A stretch of 63,563 bases of DNA, the filler included, from Pelomyxa schiedti (taxonomy: Eukaryota; Protista; Evosea), in the NCBI GenBank assembly GCA_020536535.1. It is 4 parts of 4 records of this genome, joined end to end, with 100 filler letters (N's around TTAATTAATTAA, not from the genome) between each part and the next. Parts side by side here need not be neighbours in the genome. Positions count along the whole stretch, not along the records: positions 1 to 27,457 come from JAHLWZ010001031.1; 3 more parts are not named here. The stretch is one strand, 5' to 3'. Shown here in pieces: positions 1 through 22,140 of this stretch. Each line of letters opens with the position of its first letter. The first letter of the stretch is position 1. Made by a program: the position numbers and the translations under genes. Under the pieces are notes generated by a model, which had not been told where the DNA came from, searched no databases, and worked only from the letters and a program-made list of their open reading frames with translations.

Positions 1-2973
1 GAGTGATTAAACAGTGGCATGGCCAGGATTTCTGCAGCTGTTGGCCTGTCGAAGTGAGAGACTGAGAGGCATCGATGGATAAGTTCAGCCTTGTGGATAT
101 GAGGAGAATTTCATGGGGAGGGATTGATATACTTCATGTGGGAATGAAGTCTCCAAATTTGCGGGTAGCTTTCCTTTCCGCGCATCACTTAATACGTCCG
201 CTCTCTCCATAGCAGTGGAGAAAAAGAAGTACAATTCTAGAAGTATCAGGCCTAGTGAGAAAATGTCTGTTTTCTCGTTATAAATTCCATGGGTGCACTG
301 CTCAGGTGAAGCATAAGTTGATGTGCCAATCCCAGTAGTATGTTTGCTAGGTTCTACAAATTTGTAAACGAAACCCTTATGTGGGGAAAGTAAAGTAATT
401 AATTACCCCAGGAGCAACCCAAGTAATCTGCTGACAATCTGGGGGTTGGTGTTGGTGACACTGTTGGGGAAGGTGAAGAAGGAGCAATTGAAAATTCAGA
501 TGACGAGGAAAGGCCATTTCTCCCACTCGCACAAGGGGTTCGATTTAATATAATTTTCCCATTGTTGCTATTGCGGGGAGACAAAAACGCACTAGGAGGA
601 GCTGGAAGGGAAGCTGATAGGGAAGCACATAGGTGATCCTCATGTGGTGAAAACATGGGTTGTGCTGCAAATGTTGCCAAGCTGTTCGTACAATTAGCAC
701 GTCTTTAGAATATTGCAAAGATACCCAAAATCGCCAACAGAGACTGAATAGGTGGAGGTGGAGGAGGACTCAGTCCTCTTGGAAAGGAAAATATCTGCTG
801 AAACTAAGAAAGAATAATAGAAGAGGAAACAATTACTGGCAGGTTTTATATCTCTATGAATGATGCAAAGAGAATGCAGATACTTAATCGCCTCAACTAT
901 TTGCCGAAAAATATCCAAGTTTTCTATCCTATTGATCTTCCTGCCTTCCCTTCTTAACCAAGTATCCAGAGTGGCTTCATACAGATGCATTTGTATATAC
1001 AAGACACAGGTGTCCCAACCATGTCGGTGTTGGCAGTGGTGTTCACAACTGTGATGGTGTCTGTTTGAATGTCTTGGTATAGGAATTGAAGGAGACCGAT
1101 CGGTAGTGGGTTTTGGAGGATGACCACTGCTGGAACTTTCAAATACAACCCGCTCTAAGGCGCAGGGAGGGGGTGCAAGCCGCAGCTGATCAGAGTTATC
1201 GTCAAACAAGGGTAGAGAGTCATGTAGGAAGTTACCAGCATCACTATCTACACCACTTTTGTCATATCCTGATTCGGAGCTCTGAGGATAGGAAACACGG
1301 CTCCCCTCCCCGCTGCTGGTCAATGGAGCACTCGTCTTAAGGGTTGTTATCTGGTCACATTTTCCAGCTGTTGGTTTTACAAGGTGGCCAGAATTTCCAT
1401 TCAATGGTGGTGTGGCTGAGTAAGATGTGACTGTATCGGCAGTAGAGGACACAGTAAATTCCGATTCGTTAGAGTCACTAGAGAAAGGATAAGCATGGTA
1501 TTCAGTAAGTGCATGATACCTGTTTTGTTTTACATCTAACTCCTCCTCATCTAGAGACTTCTCAAACCAGGCGTTATGATACCTAACAATATTTGGATGA
1601 TCCAAATGGGCCAAAGTTTGCACTTCCCGATAAACCTGGATGTGTGACTACTGACAAATATTTTGTGGATTACCTTGTCTCGCACCGAGCTGTGAGATCG
1701 GAATCTAATTTTCTTTACTGCATACTCACATGTGTCAACTTTGTTCATAACTTTGTATACACTTCCAAACCCCCCACGGCCCAGTTTCTGGAGTTGAACA
1801 AAATCTTGCTTGTAGCGTGATGTGCGACAGTAGCTTTCAATAGACTGTTTAGCACTGTTCGCTTGAGAGTTGTAACTGTCAGTGGACGTGCTCAAGACAA
1901 GTGGTGTATTTTCTCTATCTTGCTGTGTGTGAAGTGCATCGGCACTATTTTCGGTTGTGTTGATATGCGGAGAGGCTTCGGCATTTTCTTCGATCTCCTC
2001 ATCTATAACAGAAGAGTGTTTTACTTGTGGAGAAGAGGGTTTTTTCTACCTCCACTAAAATCTTCCCTTTCCTCAGGTGCCTCTTCCCCTCCTTCTTGAT
2101 TTATGCAACCAGTGTCAATTTTTGGCGTGTCACTGAAATGGCATTCACTTTCCTCTATTTGGGTCACACTTTTCCCCTCTAGATCACTGTCTGCCTCTTT
2201 CTCCACCTCTTGGTGAATAATGTAAATTTTGCTCGTCTTGCATGACACAGTGGAATTGCCCTCAATACTTTTGTCAATCTCAATCTCACTGCTCTCTCTT
2301 GATAATGTTGAAGCATCTGAGTGGCAATGAATCCTCGAATTCCTTGATCCATGGTGAGTGTTCTTTTGTCCTCTAGTTTTCTTGCTGTGAAATTTGTAAG
2401 AATGGAGACTGTTATGTTTAAGTACCTAGAGTAGTGGTGCTTGTGAGTGTGTTTTTTGTGCCAGTTAGTTTCACGCACAAGTCCAGCACCAGAATCATCC
2501 TCGTTGGCTTGCTCCAAGTGATGATGACCATGATGCCTGCTCCTTCTATTTACATTTACAGTATTCACAGAAGAAGAAGAAGTAGTAGTAGTAGTAGTAC
2601 AGGCCACAGAACCATAGTTCCTGCTTTTTCCCTTCTCTTTCTCTTTCTCCTCCTCCTTGTCATTTTCCTCATTCCCATTCTCACCATTATTCTCCTCCTC
2701 AATGTAATCACTTCCCCCTGGGGCCTTGTCATCGTCGGTATTGGGCACATGGCCGGCGCCGAGTGGCAGCAAGGGCAGGTGCAGTGACACACATATGGTA
2801 TGTGGCCTTCTTTTAGACGAAGTGGTGGTAGTGCTTGTGACTGTTGTGGATTTGCTGCCGGTCATTGCCAAGTTGATATTACTGCTACACTTATCCTGTG
2901 AAGGTGGTGGAATCACAACAGTGTGGCCACCTTGCACAAGACTCTCGAATGCCGACGAATTGGGGTGCTCCAA
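1..2973 (-). CDS. eIF2-alpha kinase (HRI/PERK/GCN2/PKR family), multi-exon, runs off the window start
   Basis: Motifs across exons: LGRGGFGSVYKV..YAVKKIRF (1551-1895); LAHLDHPNIVRYHNAWFE, a long kinase insert, LYIQMHLYEATLDTWL and HRDIKPANIF after splicing (694-1623); GIGTSTYASPEQ..YNEKTDIFSLGLILLELY..TAMERADVL (about 190-335); RPTAAEIL (about 20-50). The 5' end is approximate. Confidence 0.92.
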
Positions 2974-12290: not shown

Positions 12291-15200
12291 ATGCAGGCCT
12301 CTACGTCGTCGTCACCAACCGACACGACCGCGCGCCCCAAGGGAGGCTCGCCCTCCATCGCGAAACAGATCGAGGCGGTGGCGTCGGTCTCGCAGCTGGC
12401 CGACCTGCTGTCGCCCAACCGGGACGCCATCGCTCGCGAGCGCTTCTCCGTCATCTCGAGCTACGCCGCGGCCACCAGCTCGTCCTCGGCGCCTCTGCCT
12501 CCCCCCGCCGCCGCGCCCCCCTCGGGCACTCCTGCCAAGGGCGGGGTGCTCAGCAGCATCATCGCCAAGACCAAGGAGGCCGCGGCGGCGGTGGGCGCGG
12601 CGGTCACGGGCGCCGTCGTGGGGCCTGCGGACGCGGCCGCGTGCGCCGCGGCGGCGGCGGAGGCGGCGTCGGGGGACGACGCGAGGAGGGCGAGGGAGCA
12701 GCGCTCCGCCGAGGCCGTGGGGGCCTCGCGGCTGATGACGGGGCTGAGGCGCCTCGCAATCGAGATTGTGGGACAGTTTGGGAATGCGCCTGTCAAGACC
12801 AAGGCAATGGTTGACGACGTGGTTTCTTTGTCACGTGTGGAAGACCGTGAGGTAGTCTTTGTTGTTTGTCTATCCAAAAAAAAATTTTTTTTTTTTTGTA
12901 AAATTTGTGGCTAAGGGTTGGTAGAGGGCAATATATTTCATTCCCCTGAAAAATAACCCAAAAGGTTGTTCAAGTATTGCTGGATGTATTTGTTTCTCAG
13001 ATTGACCATGACCCCTTGTTACAAGTTTATATGCTGGAGGGGCTTGCTTGTATTCTAAGTGAAGCCCTGACAGAGTTCATTCCTGCTGACCAGATAGTCA
13101 AAACCCTCAATGTAATTACAAGCAAGCTTAAGGATCTCCATGCACAGCAACAGAATGCTGAACGTATATATGACACCCTTAGGGCAGTCAACAGAGTTCT
13201 CCGTGCCATGTGGGCAACTGGGGTTTGTGCCATCTCAAAGGAGGACAAAAATTCTACACTGGGGGTGTTCCAGGCCTTGAAAGATGCATATTCTGACTAC
13301 GGCACCCTGGAGTGCTGGGTTGCAAGTGAGGCAGAACTTGCAAAACAAAACCTTTTGAGAGTTGCAGATGATGAGCTTATGTTACTTGGTGTTGCCAAAC
13401 GAATAGGGCACGGTCTGATGGCGGTGCAATCAGTTGCCACCATGGTTCTTCAGTATGATGTTGGTGCACTTGTGGGTGGATTTGAGGAGCTGCAAACGGC
13501 TTTCAGTGATATCTACATCAAGAAGAGCTGGATGGACCGATTGCTCTTCATTGAATTGTCTTTCACTCAGATTGAATCCGGCTTTGTGGAAGATGACCAA
13601 ATTCCGGCAATGTTGGATCGAATTGGGCAGATCTTTTTCTCATCAAAGGAAAAGGGTGCTGCCTGTGCAGAATCAATACCAGTGGAAACTCCAGCAACCT
13701 CTCCCACTCCAGCTCTGGAAGCTAAGAGAGGCCTAGGTGTGTTCCAAAAGCACATCTCTTCTGTCAAAGCTAAAGTAGAGAAAGTTGCCGAGGCAACTAA
13801 AGAAGTTGTTTTAAATGGAGTGGACTTAGCTACCTCTGTAGTGGAAGGAGAACTTGATTTCACCCTTGGTTATATAAACATACTTGACCGAATAATAAAG
13901 TCTGACACACCTTCTTCCACTTCAATACATACTATGATCCAAATGTGGGGCCTTGAGCAACTTAAGAAAGTACTCCTAAGTGACCATGACAGAGAGGCTT
14001 CCTTTATTCGTAGAAGGCTCACTTCAGAGACCGGCATTAGAATCTATATTTTGAGTAGATTAAAGGAATATGTAGCACTTCCCGAGCCGCTCAATAACCT
14101 TGCCAAAAATTGCCTTCATGCAATCTCCGAGTTTATAGAAATTGAAGAACGAAAGAGACAAGAATACACGGAGAAACTACTTGGAATCAATTTCCCACTA
14201 CGTCGGTATAATAACCGTGATAGTTTCGAAGAAGAACTCAATGATTGTGAGTTCGGGACTAATCCTTCCACTTCCTTTCTTGCTTTTGTAAGATCTCATA
14301 GAATGTGGGTATTTGTTGATACCCCACATTCTAGGCTTATCCACTTTGCCCCTTCTCCGTATCCTGTAAAGGAAAAATCACCTAAACTGGCTTCCATACA
14401 GTATGAAAGTGAAGCTCTCTTCACAGCACCTCCTCCCCGCTCCGCTCCGAAGTTGGATGAAAATAGAAACAAACAGACTCTGGATTGCCTAACTGCCAAA
14501 CTGAAGTCAAATTTGAAATTCAGTGAAGATGCTATCAGCTCTATGATCAGTTCACTTCCGGCGTTTTCTACGTTCCTGTCTTCCATCTAATTACCACCAA
14601 TGCAGAAGTATTTCGTCCATCCCATTGTGCACTTTAAGTTGCTTTTACCTGATGTCTCAACCATCCAGCCTGTAAAGAAAGAACTCTCACTTGCCAGCGG
14701 AGAGATGCTACAAAAGGCAAAAAAGGAATTATTCAAAGTATTTAAGGCTTCATTGGATGACCAGATTGTGGATCTTTGCAAAAAAGCCCAGGATTTATAT
14801 GTCAATGAGATATCCTTACAGTATTATGTTGAACCTAATGTTAAGCTAACCGAATCTCAACCGCAGTCTGTCCCCATAACATTTCCCTTTTTCCAAGTCT
14901 TCATCCAAAAGCCTCGACCTTCAGATGTGACACCAAGGGAAACAATGGACCTCAGTGAATTACGTCCCCGAACCTTGGTTCTAGTTGGAGAGGGCGGCAT
15001 GGGTAAAACTGCATTTGGCAAATATTTGGAAAAGCAGCTCTGGGACCACTATGAAGAGATGCAGATCGTTCCCATATTAATTTCCTTACCAACAATACAT
15101 GATCCAAAGAAACGGTTTCGTCCCAACAATAAATCTTCAAGACTAATTTGGCATTAAAACTCTATGTTTATACAACAGATTGATAGAAAAGTATCTTGTT

Positions 15201-18200
15201 GAGCAAGGGTTCTCATCTGAGAACATCCAAGAACTTAAGGTTTCTGGGAGGCGCTTATTGTTTATTCTTGATGGTTATGATGAAATAAACCTGGAGTTTG
15301 GAATCAACATATGCTCAACAAACTCTCTGGAAGAATGGAATGCACAAGTCTTAATACTGAGCCGATCAGAAAACATTAAAGACCACTATGAGCAATTTGG
15401 TATCACTCGAGGACCACAAGAAGTCTTGAAATGGTATCTTGACTATTTTGATGACAGGCAGACACAAGAATTAGTAGAAAAATACAAAAAATTTGGTGGG
15501 GCTCAAGGTGTGACTTCAGCTTCACTCTTTGCTCAAAATAGCGAATTCCTTCAGGACCTCAAGGAGTTGCTCAAAGTTCCTTTCATTCTATCCATGTTAT
15601 TGGAAATATTTCCATCTCTTAATCATAGTGATGACAATTCTAGGACCAAATATTGCCATGAAGCAGAAGAGTTTCTGTATACCACAAAACTCACAAAACT
15701 CAACCTTTTTGATAAATTTACTGATTTGTGGTTTCAAAGGCAGAAAGCCAAAATTACCCCTGAAAAGCTGGCTGCCTGCCATGCAGAGACAGCCACTTCA
15801 GAATTGCGTTTCAATTTTCTCATTGGGGGAGACATTGTGGAAGACTACAAAACCTTCTGTGAAGATGTTGCAATTTATATGTTTAAATGCGGGGCAACTG
15901 CCTTGCACTACACACCGGTATGGAAAGAAGTAGATGAGGAATCTGCAATTGAGGAGGGCAGGAACGTGGAAGCATTTGACTTTAGATATAAATCTGGTGT
16001 TGCCATAGTAGATACAAAGAACCCCCTCGAGAAATTCTTCAGTTGTGTCAATAAAAGTGTGCAGCTTGTTCGCTCGGGTTGTCCTATTATACTCGAAGGT
16101 AGATCAACCTACATGTTTTTACATAAATCTTTATTGGACTACTTTGTGGCACGTAAAATCCAAAAGGAAACAAGAAGCTGTGCTGAAAAGCCATACACTA
16201 ACTTCTGGAATGTTAGAATTCATGAAACATTACTTGAGACTATTCAACTCAGAACCAACCAGCTAATACAGCAGGTTGTACAAGAAGTTGCTGAAGAATC
16301 ACCAACTCTTGACGATGAAATACGTAGTTTGTTCACCAAGGCTTGTGGTTCAACTCCCGATAAAACTTCAATGGAAAAATCCATTCTTAATTCTATTGCT
16401 GAAGGAAAAAATCCGATGGAGGCTTGTGCAGAGGCAGTGTCAAAGGAACTGCCCCACATCAATTCTAGTCGGCTTGTGGAAAATATCAGGAATAGATCAA
16501 GCCTGAGTCTTGGTGTTACCATTCTTCTCAGATCCCGCATCAGGAAATTCCTAAGAACCAGGGAACAATCTCGCAATACCAAGTATTTCCCACCACTTCC
16601 GCAGCAGGCACTCAATCTGAAATGCTTGGAACGTGAAATCGATGTCACAAAGTTTCTTGTGGAAGCACTGTTACTGGATGACCTTAGTTCCAAGCCAAGC
16701 TTCCGTGATATTCTTCTGATGATTGTAGAGAAATCCAAGTGGCTTTCTGGATGCAATTGCATCGCGGACAATAATGCCACGAAAATTTCAATGGCTGCAG
16801 CTAATTCAATGACAATTCTTGTCAGGGCAAATCACAACTTCTCTGGTGCCGATTTAAGAAATGTGCATCTAAAAGGTGCAGATCTTAGTGGTGGTGTTTT
16901 TCAAAGTACAAACTTTGCAAGCTCTGATATTTCGGAATGTAATATGCAACTCACTTGGTTGTGCAACTCCTGCTTCTCAAGATCTAGAATGAATGGTATC
17001 TACTTTGCTGAAAGACCACATGTTCGAATGGAGAATATTGATATATTTGCTATTTCACCAGATGGTAAATACATTGGTGCAGCTACAGCCGGTGGAATGT
17101 TTGGTCCGGCAACCGTGAGTCTAATTCTCAGGGAAGACGGTTCACAACAGGAACTTTGTACTGGACCGGAGATAGCATTGTGCTTCTTTACACGGAACAG
17201 TACATTCTTCATTACTCGCAACAAGTGGTCTTCAGTACAAGTGTTTGATGTTAAAACTCGAAAAACTATGTGGACTAGAGACAAGGCCTCTAGTGTGAGT
17301 GCGTCCCCAAATAGCCGACTTTGTGCTGTGACTGAGGGAAAAACTATTTCTCTTCTCACCCTTTCTCAGGGAGAGGTAGTTAGTACACTGGTCGATACTA
17401 GTGATGTCACTTGTTCATTCTTCTTCCCATACGAAAATTACCTTGCATCCTGTTCTGCCAGCCACATAGCAAAGATATGGGACCTTACATCGTACTCTGA
17501 ACTATGTAACTTCGAGTGTCCAGAGTCTGCTGTTCTCTGTACTGTATCTTCAGATAGCAAATTGCTTGCAATCTTGCATCCAAATTCTTTGAGTCTCTTT
17601 GATGTTTCTCAAATTAAGCGTTGCCACAAAATCTACCATAAGACCTCAGAAGTATTCACTAAAGCTCGACAGATACAATTTTCACCCGATAATTCATATG
17701 TTTGTACAAGCCAGGTGCAAAAAGCTGAAATGTTCTTTGGATCTGCGGCTCCCGCATGCACAGTTCACATTACCAGTTCGAACTCTGGCGAAACTGTTCG
17801 ATCAATCCCTGGTTCTTACTTCTGCTTTACCCCTGAAGGGACCCTATCTATATTAAAAGACTTTCAGCTCAACTTTTACGACTTATCCACCAGTCGATTG
17901 ATGTTTACACCCAGTAATGGGCCTGCATCACCCCTGGCAAACATAGAGATAACTCCAAGTGCAAAATACCTTTTCGGAAGGGCGAATAATACAATATATC
18001 TTTGGTCACTCCATGATGGAAGGCTGATTCATCGCTTCATTTCGCAACAAGACATTAGTAGCTTCTCCATTTTTTCATCACTCCTTGCAACTATCTCAGA
18101 GAGCAAAATTTTCATCTGGGATATAAAAACTGGTAAAGTCGCAGTAACTTACACTGCTTCTTGCCCTCTTTCTGTGTGTGCATTTTCCCCTGCAGGAGGG

Positions 18201-19978
18201 GTATTCGCAACTCTAGGAAAAAACCAAATAACTTTCTGGGAATTTCATGGAATGTCCTTCACTCCACACATTACTGTACATGGCGACCTTCCCCTACCTC
18301 TTCCAGCTATGCAGTTTTCTCCCAATGGTCGCATCTTGGCAGTGTACACACTTCTTGGAGTTGGTGCGCTTCAAATTTTTGAAGTTGCCACTGGGGAGTG
18401 CCTCTTTTCCCAGACTGCCTCCTCTACAGAATGTTTGTGTCTCTGGAAGAGTAGCCAAGTTCCAGCCCCGTTAAAAGAGGAGCTACACTTTGGACCTTCA
18501 TTATTGGGTGGCAAAATTACTGCCGAGCTTCCACTTTTGTCTAATCAGGTGTTTTTGAGAGAAAGTGCCTCTGGAAAAGAATTAAAAGCACTTGGCCCGT
18601 TCCCCTTAAATTGCTCCTGTGTTGCTGCACAGAACGATACCCTAGTTGTATTTGTAGAGAAAAATGCCTGGGTGTACAAGGTACAACTTGAAAATTCCCA
18701 GGTAGTAGTCAAATTATACAGTCGCGTTAATGGCTCCTACTGGCCACTGGAGGCATCCAATTCAGTATTTGATGAAGTAAAAGGCCTCAATAGCTCAAAC
18801 AATAAGCTTCTCATGCAGAGAGGTGCTATTATGTGTTCAGATAAACCCCCCTTTGCCGTGGTTGCTGATTCAGACATAACCTGGAAGAAAGTAAATATTA
18901 CTACCTGGAATTTTGATGTATTTCAAGTAGCGGTATTATTCCTTCAAAACATAGAGAGAAGTCTAATTTGAAACTAAAAAGAAAACTCTTGCTGGCACAA
19001 AAAGCGTTGGTGCCCTTGCAGCTGTTACCTTTGGAGTAGTTCGTGAATGGGGCCTACAAGCTTTACCAATTGACATACCAAAACTACAGGCATTTGCTTC
19101 CAAACTTGAATCCTCATATTGCTACCCGAGTGCCGAGGACCATAAAAACCCTTACCATAACGAGCTTCATGCTGCAGATGTTACTCAGTCCCTTTTCTAC
19201 ATTGTAACATCAATCATGAAGTCATCAAAAGTATTTGGAGACATTTTCACTCCTCTGGAGTTGCTTTCCTGTCTAATAGCCGGAATTATCCATGACTATA
19301 ATCATCCAGGCCGAAATGGAGCTTTCCTAAAGGCAACCATGCATCCGATTCATTGTATGTACGGCGATTCATGCTTGGAGCGGTTTTCTCTTAAATCCAG
19401 CTTCGAGCTCCTTATGACAAATCCGGCATATTATGTTCTTCAAAGTTTGCCTATTGGGCAGCAACAATATGTCCACAACCTTGTAACACAAATTGTTCTT
19501 GCAACGGATATGTCCAGGTAAATAGAGCCGTTGCTACTTGAAGGTCAACTAACTCTCTTCTAGGCACAAGGAATTCCTTGCCGCATTTAAGGCAAGCGGA
19601 ATTTCCCAAGGCAGCAAGGAAGTAACACCAGCAGAGAAAATACTAATTATGCAAATGTTCATGAAGCTTGCCGATATATCCAATGTAATAAGAGAGTACA
19701 ATACCTGTATCCAGTGGAACGGGCTCGTGATGCAAGAATTTGGGCAACAAGCAGCCGATGAAACTCAGCTTCACTTGCCTGTCACTGTTTTTGTGAACCC
19801 TCCTAACAATTTCCATGTAATTCCAAACCCTCATCACCCCTATTCGTACTAACCCCTACCAAAAAAGGGATTTGCCACAGCCATAGTACAACCACTACTG
19901 GAAGCCCTTCTCGCAGTATTCCCTTCTCTGGAAGAACTCAAACAGCAGATTCAGTCTAACCTAGCTCACAGTATCTAG
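12291..19978 (+). CDS. NLR-like STAND protein: Arm-like, NACHT, pentapeptide repeats, WD40 repeats, fused to a class I cyclic-nucleotide phosphodiesterase (about 2439 aa)
   Basis: Proposed exons 12291-12851, 12965-14560, 14606-15114, 15179-18932, 18982-19517, 19564-19816, 19868-19978 total 7320 nt (divisible by 3). Walker A LVGEGGMGKT, Walker B LFILDGYDEI, FLHKSLLDYFVA, AAANSMTILVRANHNFSGADLRNV, about 10 WD40-like repeats, then WNFDVFQ..PYHNELHAAD..HDYNHPG..LATDMSRH..KLADISN. The NACHT-WD40 and PDE identities are firm; the junction is inferred from splice signals. Confidence 0.82.
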
Positions 19979-20066: not shown

Positions 20067-22140
20067 TTACAGCTTCTCTGAAGAGGCACTGCTAGAGCCC
20101 CAGTCAGAGGAAAAGAAAAGAGGGGCAATGTACAAGCTGTGCACCACCAGCACAGCCACAATCCCCAAACACATCACCAAAAGCACCCAGAGCGGAACAT
20201 ACAGTGACATCAAGTAGGTCCCCACAACATAGATGAGCTGCTGCCCTAGGCTGTACACCATGGTGGTAACTCCATAGTTCTCACTGCTCACTGCAGTGTT
20301 GAATGTCACGTAGGAATAGCTGCTTAGGTACCATGGAATCACCTGCGCTGTGCTCATGACAACCAGGGCAGGGGTGCTGCCTACAACCCGATTTAGCAAT
20401 GAAACTGATATTAGGCAGCCGGCAGTGATTGCAAGTAGAACTGGGTTGATTCTCTTGAAGAAGACACGGGGGGCGATGTCTGATAGGGTCTGGGAGTAGA
20501 CGATCGACGCGACGAAGAACACTATATTCAGAACGAAGCCTTGCTTCATCAGGTCAAGAACAAGCCCACCACAGAAGTTTTCCCGTGTGGGAATCAGCAC
20601 AGCTTCCACAGTTACGATGGCGTCACTTTTTGCAGCTGGGATAGTGGCAGTTTGATTCAGAAGTGAGTTCATTTTGCCTCCACTGGACTTTTGTACTGCT
20701 TCCAAAGCAAATGGATAGCATATGAGCACATAAAGCATCATAAAGCCTAAGGTGTGCACAAGTGTGTGCAAAACCACTCCAGTGGTGGTAATATAGTGTG
20801 CACAGTCAACCACAATTGTTCTCACTTTCCTCACTTGCTCATAACAGAAAGAAAGCCCACATGAAGTCGTCTTTTGGTTGTCTTGTTCTTCATTGTCTGT
20901 CTGCTTGGAAATCAAACCATAGTAGAAAACTCGTATGTAGAAGAACACTATGATAACCAGAATAATATTTGCTATCATAGAAGCAGAGCATGCGAGGAAA
21001 AGAACAGTGCTTACACTCATAGGAAATAAGAACATTGGTAGAATGAAAGCAAACTCAAACAACTCGGTGAAGAGATCACCACTATTGGAAATGGAGTTTG
21101 AGAGTGCATTCTTTTCATCAGATGACATTTCTGCACAGGAAACAAAAAAAAGTTAGTTAAGTTGAGCCAGGGAGGGATATGGACCAATAAAGTTGAGCCG
21201 CATTTTCAGTAATTTCCAAATGCTGGCCATAGATTGAGAAAACATTGCCTGCCTCATCTGATAAAACCAGCCAGCTAAAACTGAGGCCCAAGAAGTGTGC
21301 ATGAAAATTAACCAGATTGAAAAGGTTTGACATATCAATTGGCACAGAGATGTGACCTGTACTTCCGTGAAACTCCGAGGCTCTTAGCTCTCAAATACCT
21401 TCATCACAATGTGTTGTTTGGTTGGAATGGTATCACTTATGTAACCACTGACAAAACTTGTAGGTATGGCTAAGACCGTTCCAACGAACATCCACTGTAC
21501 CGTTGTTAACAAAAGAAATCAGGGTAAGTATACTTGTGTGTATGTGTCCACAAAAGAGCATCCTGAGATTCCGTATGATAGTAGCACATACATTACATAT
21601 CTTGTGTATGATTCGTTTGTGGGGGAGAAAAAAAAAAACCTCAGTACCTCTCAAAATTCAGTTGAATAAGGTCGAAGCCCCACTGTGCACACACTTATTT
21701 TGTTATAAAAGATACATAGTACCAAAACCAGCAAAAAATAAACTAAATAGTGCACAGGTAGGAGGGGAAGCACAAACCATAATCAAGAAACACCACTTCT
21801 CCAACTTTGGCAACTCCCTTTCCACCACCCCCGAGCGCTTTTTTTTGTTCGCCCCAGCAGTGGAGCTTCCATTTTCAATGGTATTCCCAGTCTCCTTAAC
21901 CAAAGGTGGCGTTCCCATTATTCCGTTGTGCCTGCCGTCGCCGCCCGCTTCGAGGTCGCGGGCAACCGCGTTAACACCCGCTACGTAGTCGCGTTCCTCG
22001 TCGCCCCTCTCCCTGAGGCGTCCCCCTCCAAGCCTGTTTACAACCCCACCAGTACTTTGGGCTTTTTGTAATTGTGGGACTTGTCTGGCACCAGGAAGAG
22101 CGACCCCGACCTGATCCACAGCAACACGAGCAACATCCAT
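20067..22140 (-). CDS. multi-pass membrane transporter, MFS-like
   Basis: About 10-12 hydrophobic segments across exons in two bundles separated by a polar loop; hydrophilic N-terminus. The exact family is not recognised. Confidence 0.65.

What the first reader, a model, noticed from the sequence alone, without database searches (positions are those of the whole stretch)
18982..19978. Fused PDE keeps its metal ligands but has a remodelled substrate pocket
Seen: the metal-binding residues YHNxxH, HD and KxADISN are intact. The usual LENHH reads LERFS, EFxxQGDxE reads EFGQQAADE, and the position of the invariant purine-binding Gln (Q-x-G-F) reads F-H-G-F if intron 19817-19867 is correct. Established: this Gln recognises the nucleobase in class I PDEs. 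Inference: altered specificity (for example non-purine or oligonucleotide messengers) or a pseudo-enzyme sensor.
Basis: partly seen in the sequence, partly recalled or inferred. Interest (0 to 1): 0.7.

Follow-up and report, generated by a model that had tools for sequence, protein, structure and literature searches.

The report
Glutamine-less phosphodiesterase fused to NACHT-WD40 protein
An anaerobic amoeba (Pelomyxa schiedti) expresses a giant NLR-like switch protein ending in a cyclic-nucleotide phosphodiesterase domain that keeps its catalytic metal site but has lost the glutamine that normally reads the nucleotide base; this is an unusual natural variant of a well-known enzyme, and its function has not been tested.

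Summary
Window 18982-19978 encodes the last three exons of a class I PDE catalytic domain (Pfam PF00233, 174 bits). This domain is the C-terminus of a 2408-aa Pelomyxa schiedti protein (KAH3742964.1) built as ARM-like, NACHT, pentapeptide, two WD40 propellers, PDE. An independent RNA contig confirms both internal introns, including 19817-19867, so the F-H|G-F junction exists in mRNA.

The four direct metal ligands, the general-acid His and the hydrophobic clamp are kept. In LERFS only the Ser is unusual: His in 144 of 150 homologues, and one of the eight strictly conserved metal-pocket residues. The R and F are normal for the Archamoebae subfamily (LER[F/M]H). The invariant Gln (121 of 125 homologues) is missing: Phe2371 takes its place in the helix, and five residues just upstream are deleted. 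The change lies at an intron shared with two paralogues, whose exons end in the Gln codon cag; here the exon ends in cat (His).

The domain is not decayed (6 of 39 conserved columns differ, against 3-6 in its subfamily) but evolves about twice as fast as its sister paralogue. The most likely reading is a still-catalytic PDE with weakened or relaxed base recognition, serving as the output of a STAND switch. A pseudo-enzyme cannot be excluded. No other NACHT+PDE fusion was found.

The parts
12291..19978 (+). Whole gene. It is the public model KAH3742964.1 (P0001, 2408 aa), with 8 exons: 12291-12857, 12971-14452, 14530-14607, 14669-15114, 15179-18932, 18982-19517, 19564-19816, 19868-19978.
   Evidence: The search returned P0001 at 100% identity.
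12738..13507 (+). ARM-like repeat region (Pfam ARM_5, residues 150-368). The span includes the intron 12858-12970.
   Evidence: PF23948 at 61.7 bits, against a cut-off of 27.
14969..15305 (+). NACHT NTPase core (residues 810-900). The P-loop GEGGMGKT lies at 14987-15010 and the Walker B LLFILDGYDE at 15255-15284. The core is split by intron 15115-15178.
   Evidence: PF05729 at 33 bits, against a cut-off of 26.7. The motifs were read.
16836..16949 (+). Pentapeptide repeats (residues 1411-1448).
   Evidence: PF00805 at 28 bits, against a cut-off of 20.2.
17133..18455 (+). Two WD40 beta-propeller regions (residues about 1510-1950).
   Evidence: Many WD40 and beta-propeller Pfam models match. RNA contigs cover 17000-17729 and 18021-18506.
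18906..18932 (+). First helix of the PDE domain (W-N-F-D-V-F, residues 2101-2106). It is encoded in the same open reading frame as the WD40 repeats.
   Evidence: W, F, D and F are the majority residues in these columns across 150 homologues. There is no stop codon between the WD40 region and this motif.
18933..18981 (+). Intron 1 of the PDE domain (49 nt, GT..AG, phase 0).
   Evidence: Both paralogues have an intron at the same position. No RNA contig covers it.
18982..19517 (+). PDE exon 1. It carries YHNELH (19153-19170), HDYNH (19291-19305), the Asn-to-Gly change (19318-19320), LERFS (19375-19389; the Ser codon is 19387-19389) and ATDM (19501-19512).
   Evidence: PF00233 at 1.4e-28. PDE4D is the best solved match at 1.2e-17, and there LENHH aligns with LERFS. 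RNA contigs cover 19067-19487 with 0 differences.
19518..19563 (+). Intron 2 (46 nt, GT..AG, phase 2).
   Evidence: An RNA contig skips it. Both paralogues have an intron at the same position.
19564..19816 (+). PDE exon 2. It carries KLADISN (19664-19684) and EFGQQAADE (19736-19762). It ends in F2371-H2372 (19811-19816); the last codon is cat.
   Evidence: PF00233 at 1.6e-12. PDE8A and PDE3 are the best solved matches. The RNA contig covers it.
19817..19867 (+). Intron 3 (51 nt, GT..AG, phase 0). It is in frame but contains a TAA stop and no Gln codon.
   Evidence: An RNA contig skips it. Its reading was checked. Both paralogues have a phase-0 intron at the homologous place, directly after the Gln codon cag.
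19868..19978 (+). PDE exon 3. It starts with G-F (the clamp Phe2374 is 19871-19873), continues through the last helices, and ends at the stop TAG (19976-19978).
   Evidence: Translation. It is identical to the C-terminus of P0001. The RNA contig reaches 19922.

Best explanation
The gene encodes an NLR-like STAND NTPase of Pelomyxa schiedti. Its order of domains is: ARM-like N-terminus, NACHT, pentapeptide repeats, two WD40 propellers, and a C-terminal class I cyclic-nucleotide phosphodiesterase domain.

Shown here:
- The PDE domain arose by duplication of a Pelomyxa sensor-type PDE. It is sister to KAH3745332.1 and shares all three intron positions with it.
- It is transcribed and correctly spliced, and it is predicted to fold as a normal PDE.
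- After the fusion it evolved about twice as fast as its sister.
- Around the third intron it lost the nucleobase-reading Gln. The old Gln codon cag now reads cat (His). Three codons are missing upstream and one downstream, so Phe2371 takes the Gln's place on the helix.
- One second-shell His of the metal pocket became Ser.

Inferred:
- The four direct metal ligands, the general-acid His, Glu and Thr/Asp of the water shell, Asn321-equivalent and both clamp residues remain. The domain therefore most likely still binds two metals and hydrolyses a 3',5'-cyclic phosphate.
- It probably does so with lower affinity and less purine discrimination than its paralogues.
- Activity is probably governed by nucleotide-dependent conformational change or oligomerisation of the NACHT-WD40 part, rather than by tight substrate binding.
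For: - Domain identity: PF00233 at 174 bits over profile 1-237 of 238. The AlphaFold model has pLDDT 95.4, and Foldseek gives TM 0.86-0.90 to PDE4D, PDE4B, PDE1B and PDE3A.
- Splicing and expression: an RNA contig skips both introns exactly.
- Fusion: PDE helix 1 lies in the WD40 open reading frame, and intron 1 is shared with the paralogues.
- Origin: in the tree it is sister to P0003 with support 95/88, inside a Pelomyxa + Mastigella clade with support 100/99.
- Retained catalytic set: Y2167, H2168, H2172, H2213, D2214, H2217, E2242, T2284, D2285, D2325, N2328, E2346, F2347 and F2374 all match the consensus.
- No decay: 6 of 39 conserved columns differ, against 3-6 in the subfamily. The terminal branch is 1.30 changes per site, so neutral retention of about 11 catalytic residues would be very improbable (my estimate).
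- Gln replaced by Phe, with a five-residue deletion: profile HMM alignment and a continuous predicted helix over 2367-2389.
- Gln mutants keep turnover: PDE9 Q453E keeps half of kcat and loses 50-fold in kcat/KM for cGMP and about 5-fold for cAMP. PDE5 Q817A loses about 60-fold in cGMP affinity (PMC3069055).
Against: - No enzymatic data exist.
- The His replaced by Ser is one of eight residues called strictly conserved in the metal pocket (PMC5617230). Its loss, together with Asn to Gly in the HD...N signature, could cripple binding of the second metal.
- The doubled branch length fits relaxed constraint as well as a new function.
- Only one species and one gene are known, so purifying selection on the changed residues cannot be tested.
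- No read joins the NACHT-WD40 part to the PDE part at the RNA level: 18560-18975 is uncovered.
- The local confidence of the model is lowest around the changed helix start (block mean pLDDT 80).
Confidence: 0.5

Rival explanations
1. Pseudo-enzyme. The domain keeps the fold and perhaps the metals, but it no longer turns substrate over. It would act as a ligand-binding or protein-docking module of the STAND protein.
For: - Two hallmark residues are lost together: the Gln, and the His of E-x-x-H.
- Asn to Gly lies inside the signature motif.
- The branch is twice as long as that of the sister paralogue.
- A C-terminal position behind WD40 repeats is atypical for an effector.
Against: - All four direct metal ligands and the general-acid His, which are needed only for chemistry, are retained.
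- Ser at the His position occurs in three other homologues.
- Gln mutants of human PDEs remain active.
- Overall conservation is within the range of the subfamily.
Confidence: 0.25
2. New substrate class. The hydrophobic, Gln-less and shortened pocket has been retuned for a non-purine cyclic nucleotide or a cyclic or linear oligonucleotide messenger.
For: - Phe replaces the base-reading Gln, and the linker before the helix is five residues shorter.
- The NLR-like context recalls immune signalling proteins.
Against: - There is no positive evidence for any alternative substrate.
- The purine clamp (Val2343, Phe2374) and the Asn321 equivalent are unchanged.
- No family of similarly changed PDEs exists that would indicate a selected new specificity.
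Confidence: 0.12
3. A domain in early decay. After the fusion the PDE became dispensable and is drifting. The junction rearrangement would be a tolerated splice-site accident.
For: - The lesion sits exactly at an exon junction.
- The branch is long.
- The fusion is known in a single species only.
Against: - The frame is open and all three introns are kept and spliced.
- Catalytic residues are retained, and the count of mismatches at conserved columns is not raised.
- The fold is predicted with confidence.
Confidence: 0.1
4. An artefact of assembly or gene prediction. On this view a wrong splice or an indel in a single-cell amplified genome creates the apparent loss of the Gln.
For: The genome comes from single-cell amplification (PMC8887013).
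Against: - An independent RNA library gives the same exon sequence with no differences and the same two joints.
- The intron contains a stop and no Gln codon in any usable position.
- Two DNA runs agree, although they may be the source of the assembly.
Confidence: 0.03

Closest known systems
Class I cyclic-nucleotide phosphodiesterases (Pfam PF00233); best solved matches are human PDE4D/4B, PDE3A, PDE1B and PDE8A
   Same: - It has the same all-helical catalytic fold (TM 0.86-0.90).
- The same metal ligands are present, equivalent to PDE4D2 H164, H200, D201 and D318.
- The general-acid His, the E, T and D of the water shell, the Asn321 equivalent and the hydrophobic clamp are all kept.
   Different: - The invariant Gln (PDE4D2 Q369) is replaced by Phe, with a five-residue deletion before it.
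- The H233 equivalent is Ser, the N209 equivalent is Gly and the G344 equivalent is Ala.
- The domain is attached to a NACHT-WD40 protein, not to GAF, PAS, REC, UCR or calmodulin-binding regulators.
Pelomyxa schiedti paralogues KAH3745332.1 (P0003) and KAH3744580.1 (P0002), and the Mastigella eilhardi transcripts of the same Archamoebae PDE subfamily
   Same: - They are 39-45% identical over the domain in the alignment (46-50% over exon 1 alone).
- They share the subfamily traits LER[F/M]H and H-G-x-S in place of Y-N-D-x-S.
- All three intron positions are the same.
   Different: - The paralogues are 800-1000 aa proteins. One has a Cache/PDC-type sensor region.
- They keep the Gln as the last codon before intron 3, and they keep the His of E-x-x-H.
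- None of them carries a NACHT or WD40 region.
NACHT-pentapeptide-WD40 STAND NTPases, often with an ARM_5 N-terminus, of Mucoromycota and Glomeromycota fungi, Glomeribacter and other microbes, plus the Pelomyxa paralogue Pelo_4669
   Same: - The NACHT core, pentapeptide repeats and WD40 propellers come in the same order.
- Identity is 23-41% over residues 700-1460.
   Different: None of the 30 relatives listed carries PF00233. The C-terminal PDE is found only in this protein.
KAH3758970.1 (P0035), a second Pelomyxa protein that combines WD40 repeats with a PDE
   Same: WD40 repeats and a C-terminal class I PDE lie in one polypeptide of the same organism.
   Different: - It has no NACHT domain, and an NMT1-like domain lies between the WD40 repeats and the PDE.
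- Its PDE lies outside the subfamily clade and keeps the Gln and the His.

Membership tests
Class I cyclic-nucleotide PDE (PF00233) | Match to the Pfam PDEase_I profile above the gathering score | tested here: met
   The score is 174.4 bits against a cut-off of 24.8, over profile positions 1-237 of 238. The exons taken separately give 100.6 and 48.1 bits.
Class I cyclic-nucleotide PDE (PF00233) | All-helical HD-type catalytic fold | tested here: met
   The AlphaFold2 model has pLDDT 95.4 and pTM 0.94. Foldseek gives TM 0.86-0.90 to solved PDE4D, 4B, 1B and 3A structures. This is a prediction, not a solved structure.
Class I cyclic-nucleotide PDE (PF00233) | [quoted passage not shown] | tested here: not met
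   Seven of the eight are present: H2168, H2172, H2213, D2214, H2217, E2242 and D2325. The seventh in the list, the His three residues after the Glu, is Ser2245.
Class I cyclic-nucleotide PDE (PF00233) | Signature H-D-x-x-H-x-[AG]-x-x-[NQ]-x-[hydrophobic] (PROSITE PS00126, recalled from memory) | tested here: not met
   The sequence reads H-D-Y-N-H-P-G-R-N-G-A-F. The [NQ] position is Gly2222, where 137 of 150 homologues have Asn.
Class I cyclic-nucleotide PDE (PF00233) | Invariant nucleobase-binding Gln, three residues before the clamp Phe | tested here: not met
   121 of 125 homologues have Gln. Here the position is Phe2371 by profile alignment and by the helix register. Neither the exons nor the intron encode Q-x-G-F.
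Class I cyclic-nucleotide PDE (PF00233) | Hydrophobic clamp around the base (PDE4D2 I336 and F372 equivalents) | tested here: met
   Val2343 and Phe2374 are present, and Phe2347 (the F340 equivalent) is also kept. The numbering was mapped through the PDE4-like homologue P0008.
Class I cyclic-nucleotide PDE (PF00233) | Hydrolysis of cAMP or cGMP | not testable with these tools
   This needs an enzyme assay.
STAND / NLR-like NACHT NTPase | NACHT profile match with Walker A and Walker B motifs | tested here: met
   PF05729 scores 33 bits against a cut-off of 26.7. GEGGMGKT lies at 14987-15010 and LLFILDGYDE at 15255-15284.
STAND / NLR-like NACHT NTPase | Tripartite layout with C-terminal repeat domain | tested here: met
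   Pentapeptide repeats and two WD40 propellers follow the NACHT domain. Relatives show the same order.
STAND / NLR-like NACHT NTPase | Nucleotide-dependent oligomerisation that activates an effector domain | not testable with these tools
   This is inferred only from family membership.

The most novel reading that the evidence does not exclude
The protein would be an NLR-like immune or symbiont-surveillance switch of an amoeba that lives packed with prokaryotic endosymbionts. Its Gln-less, more hydrophobic PDE pocket would have been selected to destroy a non-canonical nucleotide messenger (a pyrimidine cNMP or a cyclic oligonucleotide) once the NACHT-WD40 part senses a ligand. That would be a eukaryotic counterpart of signal-degrading enzymes in prokaryotic defence, built from a class I PDE.
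Probability: 0.06. Interest if true: 0.85.

Novelty: new variant of a known kind. Interest (0 to 1): 0.45.

Why it matters
- Scarce natural test case. The 'invariant' glutamine underlies the glutamine-switch idea of PDE selectivity and most PDE inhibitor design. This is an expressed, otherwise well-kept PDE in which Phe replaces it, next to two close paralogues that keep it. It therefore offers a ready-made comparison for asking what the Gln contributes to affinity and to cAMP/cGMP discrimination.
- New domain combination. A NACHT-WD40 STAND protein carrying a PDE was seen nowhere else in the searches. It would link NLR-type switching to cyclic-nucleotide signalling in Archamoebae.
- Mechanism of loss. 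A hallmark residue was lost through small changes at an exon junction.

Tried and rejected
- My first reading of the last intron suggested a frame problem. That was my own miscount by one base.
- I looked for an alternative donor or acceptor, or intron retention, that would restore Q-x-G-F. There is none. The 51-nt intron is in frame but holds a TAA stop and no Gln codon, and its only AG is the acceptor.
- Literature searches for the role of the PDE4 His233 equivalent gave nothing useful. Its description as a second-shell partner of the second metal rests on my own knowledge, plus the list of eight conserved residues in PMC5617230.
- The P. schiedti genome paper does not mention PDEs or NACHT proteins.
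- MAFFT placed the gap in two different ways: the Gln column as a gap, and Gln aligned to Phe. A profile HMM built without the query settled it as Gln to Phe2371.
- The structure tools do not return coordinates. I therefore could not measure where Phe2371, His2372 or Asn2370 point, and I could not dock ligands.
The joined protein used from then on is the public model P0001 returned by the search, and it was checked to equal the exon translations.

Full report
**What is there**

The window is a contig of Pelomyxa schiedti (Archamoebae). An exhaustive protein search with the first PDE exon returned a 2408-aa public protein at 100% identity (P0001). It is named KAH3742964.1, 'NB-ARC domain protein [Pelomyxa schiedti]', and sits on a 27,457-base contig. 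Its sequence equals the translations of the three exons I had delimited by hand.

From then on the joined protein is that public model, used by reference. Mapped to the window, it has eight exons between 12291 and 19978.

Pfam finds these domains:
- an ARM-like repeat, residues 150-368
- a NACHT domain, 810-900, with P-loop GEGGMGKT and Walker B LLFILDGYDE
- pentapeptide repeats, 1411-1448
- two WD40 propeller regions, about 1510-1950
- a full-length class I PDE catalytic domain, 2167-2399 (174 bits)

**Check of the observation**

A contig from an independent single-cell RNA-seq library skips 19518-19563 and 19817-19867, both GT..AG. It matches the exons without a single difference from 19470 to 19922 (X1 record 5). 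Other RNA contigs cover 19067-19487, again without differences.

The junction F-H|G-F and the codons for LERFS therefore exist in mRNA. They are not errors of the amplified single-cell genome (PMC8887013). The intron is in frame, but it carries a TAA stop and no Gln codon, so neither retention nor an alternative site could give Q-x-G-F.

**How unusual each change is**

I aligned the domain with the 149 best homologues from the exhaustive search. I mapped PDE4D2 numbering through a PDE4-like homologue (P0008) and the PDB alignments.

Retained residues (PDE4D2 number, then residue here):

| PDE4D2 | This protein |
|---|---|
| Y159 / H160 | Y2167 / H2168 |
| H164 | H2172 |
| H200 / D201 | H2213 / D2214 |
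| H204 | H2217 |
| E230 | E2242 |
| T271 / D272 / M273 | T2284 / D2285 / M2286 |
| D318 | D2325 |
| N321 | N2328 |
| I336 | V2343 |
| E339 / F340 | E2346 / F2347 |
| F372 | F2374 |

Deviations:
- In LERFS, the R is seen in 20 of 150 homologues and the F in 49 of 150. Both are the rule in the Pelomyxa/Mastigella subfamily, which reads LER[F/M]H.
- The Ser is rare: His in 144 of 150, Ser in 4.
- In EFGQQAADE, the Gly to Ala change is unusual (Gly in 123 of 131). The Asp is already variable in the subfamily.

**The glutamine**

Gln occupies its column in 121 of the 125 homologues that reach it. In this protein the stretch between the F-M-D-[RG] equivalent (F-V-N-P) and the clamp Phe is five residues shorter than the consensus and four shorter than in its closest paralogues.

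A profile HMM built from 52 homologues without the query deletes five residues and aligns Gln with Phe2371, with high posterior probability. This agrees with the AlphaFold2 model (pLDDT 95.4, pTM 0.94). In that model one continuous helix runs from residue 2367 to 2389, which puts Phe2371 three residues before the clamp Phe2374. Local confidence is lowest there, with a block mean of 80.

**History of the change**

I fetched the genes of the two closest paralogues (L001 and L002). All three introns of the PDE domain lie at the same places in all three genes. The third intron is phase 0.

In both paralogues it directly follows the Gln codon (cag|GT). Here the exon ends in cat (His2372). The next exon starts one codon closer to the clamp Phe: G-F, against I-N-F and S-T-F in the paralogues. 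Three further codons are missing upstream.

So His2372 is probably the descendant of the Gln codon, changed by one base at the last exon position. Small deletions on both sides of the junction then shifted the helix register, so that Phe2371 rather than His2372 faces the pocket. The first half of this account follows from intron homology. The second rests on the predicted helix.

**Origin and rate**

In a maximum-likelihood tree of 23 domains, the fused domain is sister to P0003 (KAH3745332.1; support 95/88). Both lie in a Pelomyxa group with P0002, inside a clade of Pelomyxa and Mastigella PDEs (support 100/99). Its terminal branch is 1.30 changes per site, against 0.62 for the sister.

The domain is not degenerate. 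At 39 columns conserved in at least 85% of homologues it differs at 6. Its subfamily members differ at 3-6, and the median over all homologues is 2.5. With a branch of 1.3 changes per site, chance retention of about eleven residues needed only for catalysis would be very unlikely. This is my own estimate.

**The fusion**

No RNA contig crosses 18560-18975, so the junction between the WD40 and PDE parts is not shown at the RNA level. It is still well supported:
- The first helix of the PDE domain (W-N-F-D-V-F, 18906-18923) matches the majority residues in these columns across the homologues.
- That helix lies in the same uninterrupted reading frame as the WD40 repeats.
- The intron after it is at the same place as in both paralogues.

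The NACHT-pentapeptide-WD40 core has relatives in Mucoromycota and Glomeromycota fungi, in Glomeribacter and in other microbes, and a paralogue in Pelomyxa. None of these carries a PDE. Among long proteins with a similar PDE domain, none carries a NACHT domain. That search depends on shared words, so distant cases could be missed.

**Mechanism**

Shown:
- The gene is an expressed, spliced fusion.
- The fold is predicted to be a PDE (TM 0.86-0.90 to PDE4D, 4B, 1B and 3A).
- The direct catalytic machinery is retained.
- The Gln and one second-shell His are lost.

Inferred:
- The domain still binds metals and hydrolyses a cyclic phosphate, with weaker and less selective base recognition. Published mutants of the Gln keep turnover. 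PDE9 Q453E retains about half of kcat and loses about 50-fold in kcat/KM for cGMP and about 5-fold for cAMP. PDE5 Q817A loses about 60-fold in cGMP affinity without affecting cAMP kinetics (PMC3069055).
- Activity is controlled by the STAND switch.

I put about 0.5 on this reading. The rivals are:

| Rival | Probability |
|---|---|
| Pseudo-enzyme | 0.25 |
| Truly new substrate | 0.12 |
| Early decay | 0.10 |
| Artefact | 0.03 |

**Novelty and verdict**

The gene is in GenBank only with an automatic name. The genome paper does not mention it. It is a new variant of known kinds: a class I PDE that fails three of its hallmark tests (the Gln, the eighth metal-pocket residue, and the signature Asn), attached to a NACHT-WD40 protein.

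The interest is moderate. It is a clean natural experiment on the 'invariant' glutamine and a new domain combination. It rests, however, on one gene in one species, with no functional data.

Noticed in passing
KAH3758970.1 (P0035), a Pelomyxa schiedti protein outside the window: This is a second Pelomyxa protein that joins WD40 repeats to a C-terminal class I PDE, with an NMT1/THI5-like domain between them. Its PDE keeps the Gln and the His. WD40-PDE combinations may be recurrent in this amoeba.
   Followed up: partly
L002 1001-3944 (P0002, KAH3744580.1) and L001 1001-4177 (P0003): The closest paralogues are 865-904 aa PDEs. P0002 has a Cache/PDC-type sensor region upstream of the PDE. This suggests receptor-like PDEs in Archamoebae, a whole subfamily that reads LER[F/M]H and Q-x-T-F in place of LENHH and Q-x-G-F.
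   Followed up: partly
window 19067 and 17365: RNA contigs carry template-switch-oligo sequence (…AACGCAGAGTACATGGG) directly before these positions inside the gene (table 7). These could be 5' ends of broken RNA, strand invasion, or internal starts. The end at 19067 lies just inside the PDE part.
   Followed up: no
window 17252 and 17396: The RNA contig differs from the genome at two places in the WD40 region (T>G and T>C). These could be allelic or strain differences between the cells sequenced, or errors at low depth.
   Followed up: no
window 14530-14607: The public gene model contains a short 26-codon exon in a different frame from the flanking long open reading frames. An in-frame TAA at 14588-14590 separates the two long ORFs. 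This part of the model has no RNA check here and may be mis-predicted.
   Followed up: no
window 694-1895 (- strand): A protein kinase gene in at least two exons, with a long Ser/Pro-rich insert in the kinase domain (Pfam Pkinase).
   Followed up: no
window 20067-21128 (- strand): A 353-aa open reading frame that looks like a multi-pass membrane protein. It has no Pfam match and converges on the 3' end of the PDE gene, about 90 bases away.
   Followed up: no
P0011 (Mastigamoeba balamuthi, RegA-like), P0043, P0053: These are the few other homologues without Gln at the invariant position: Glu in P0011 and Lys in P0043 and P0053. P0053 is flagged as contamination in its record. The Mastigamoeba RegA-like protein with Glu may be another natural variant worth a look.
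   Followed up: no
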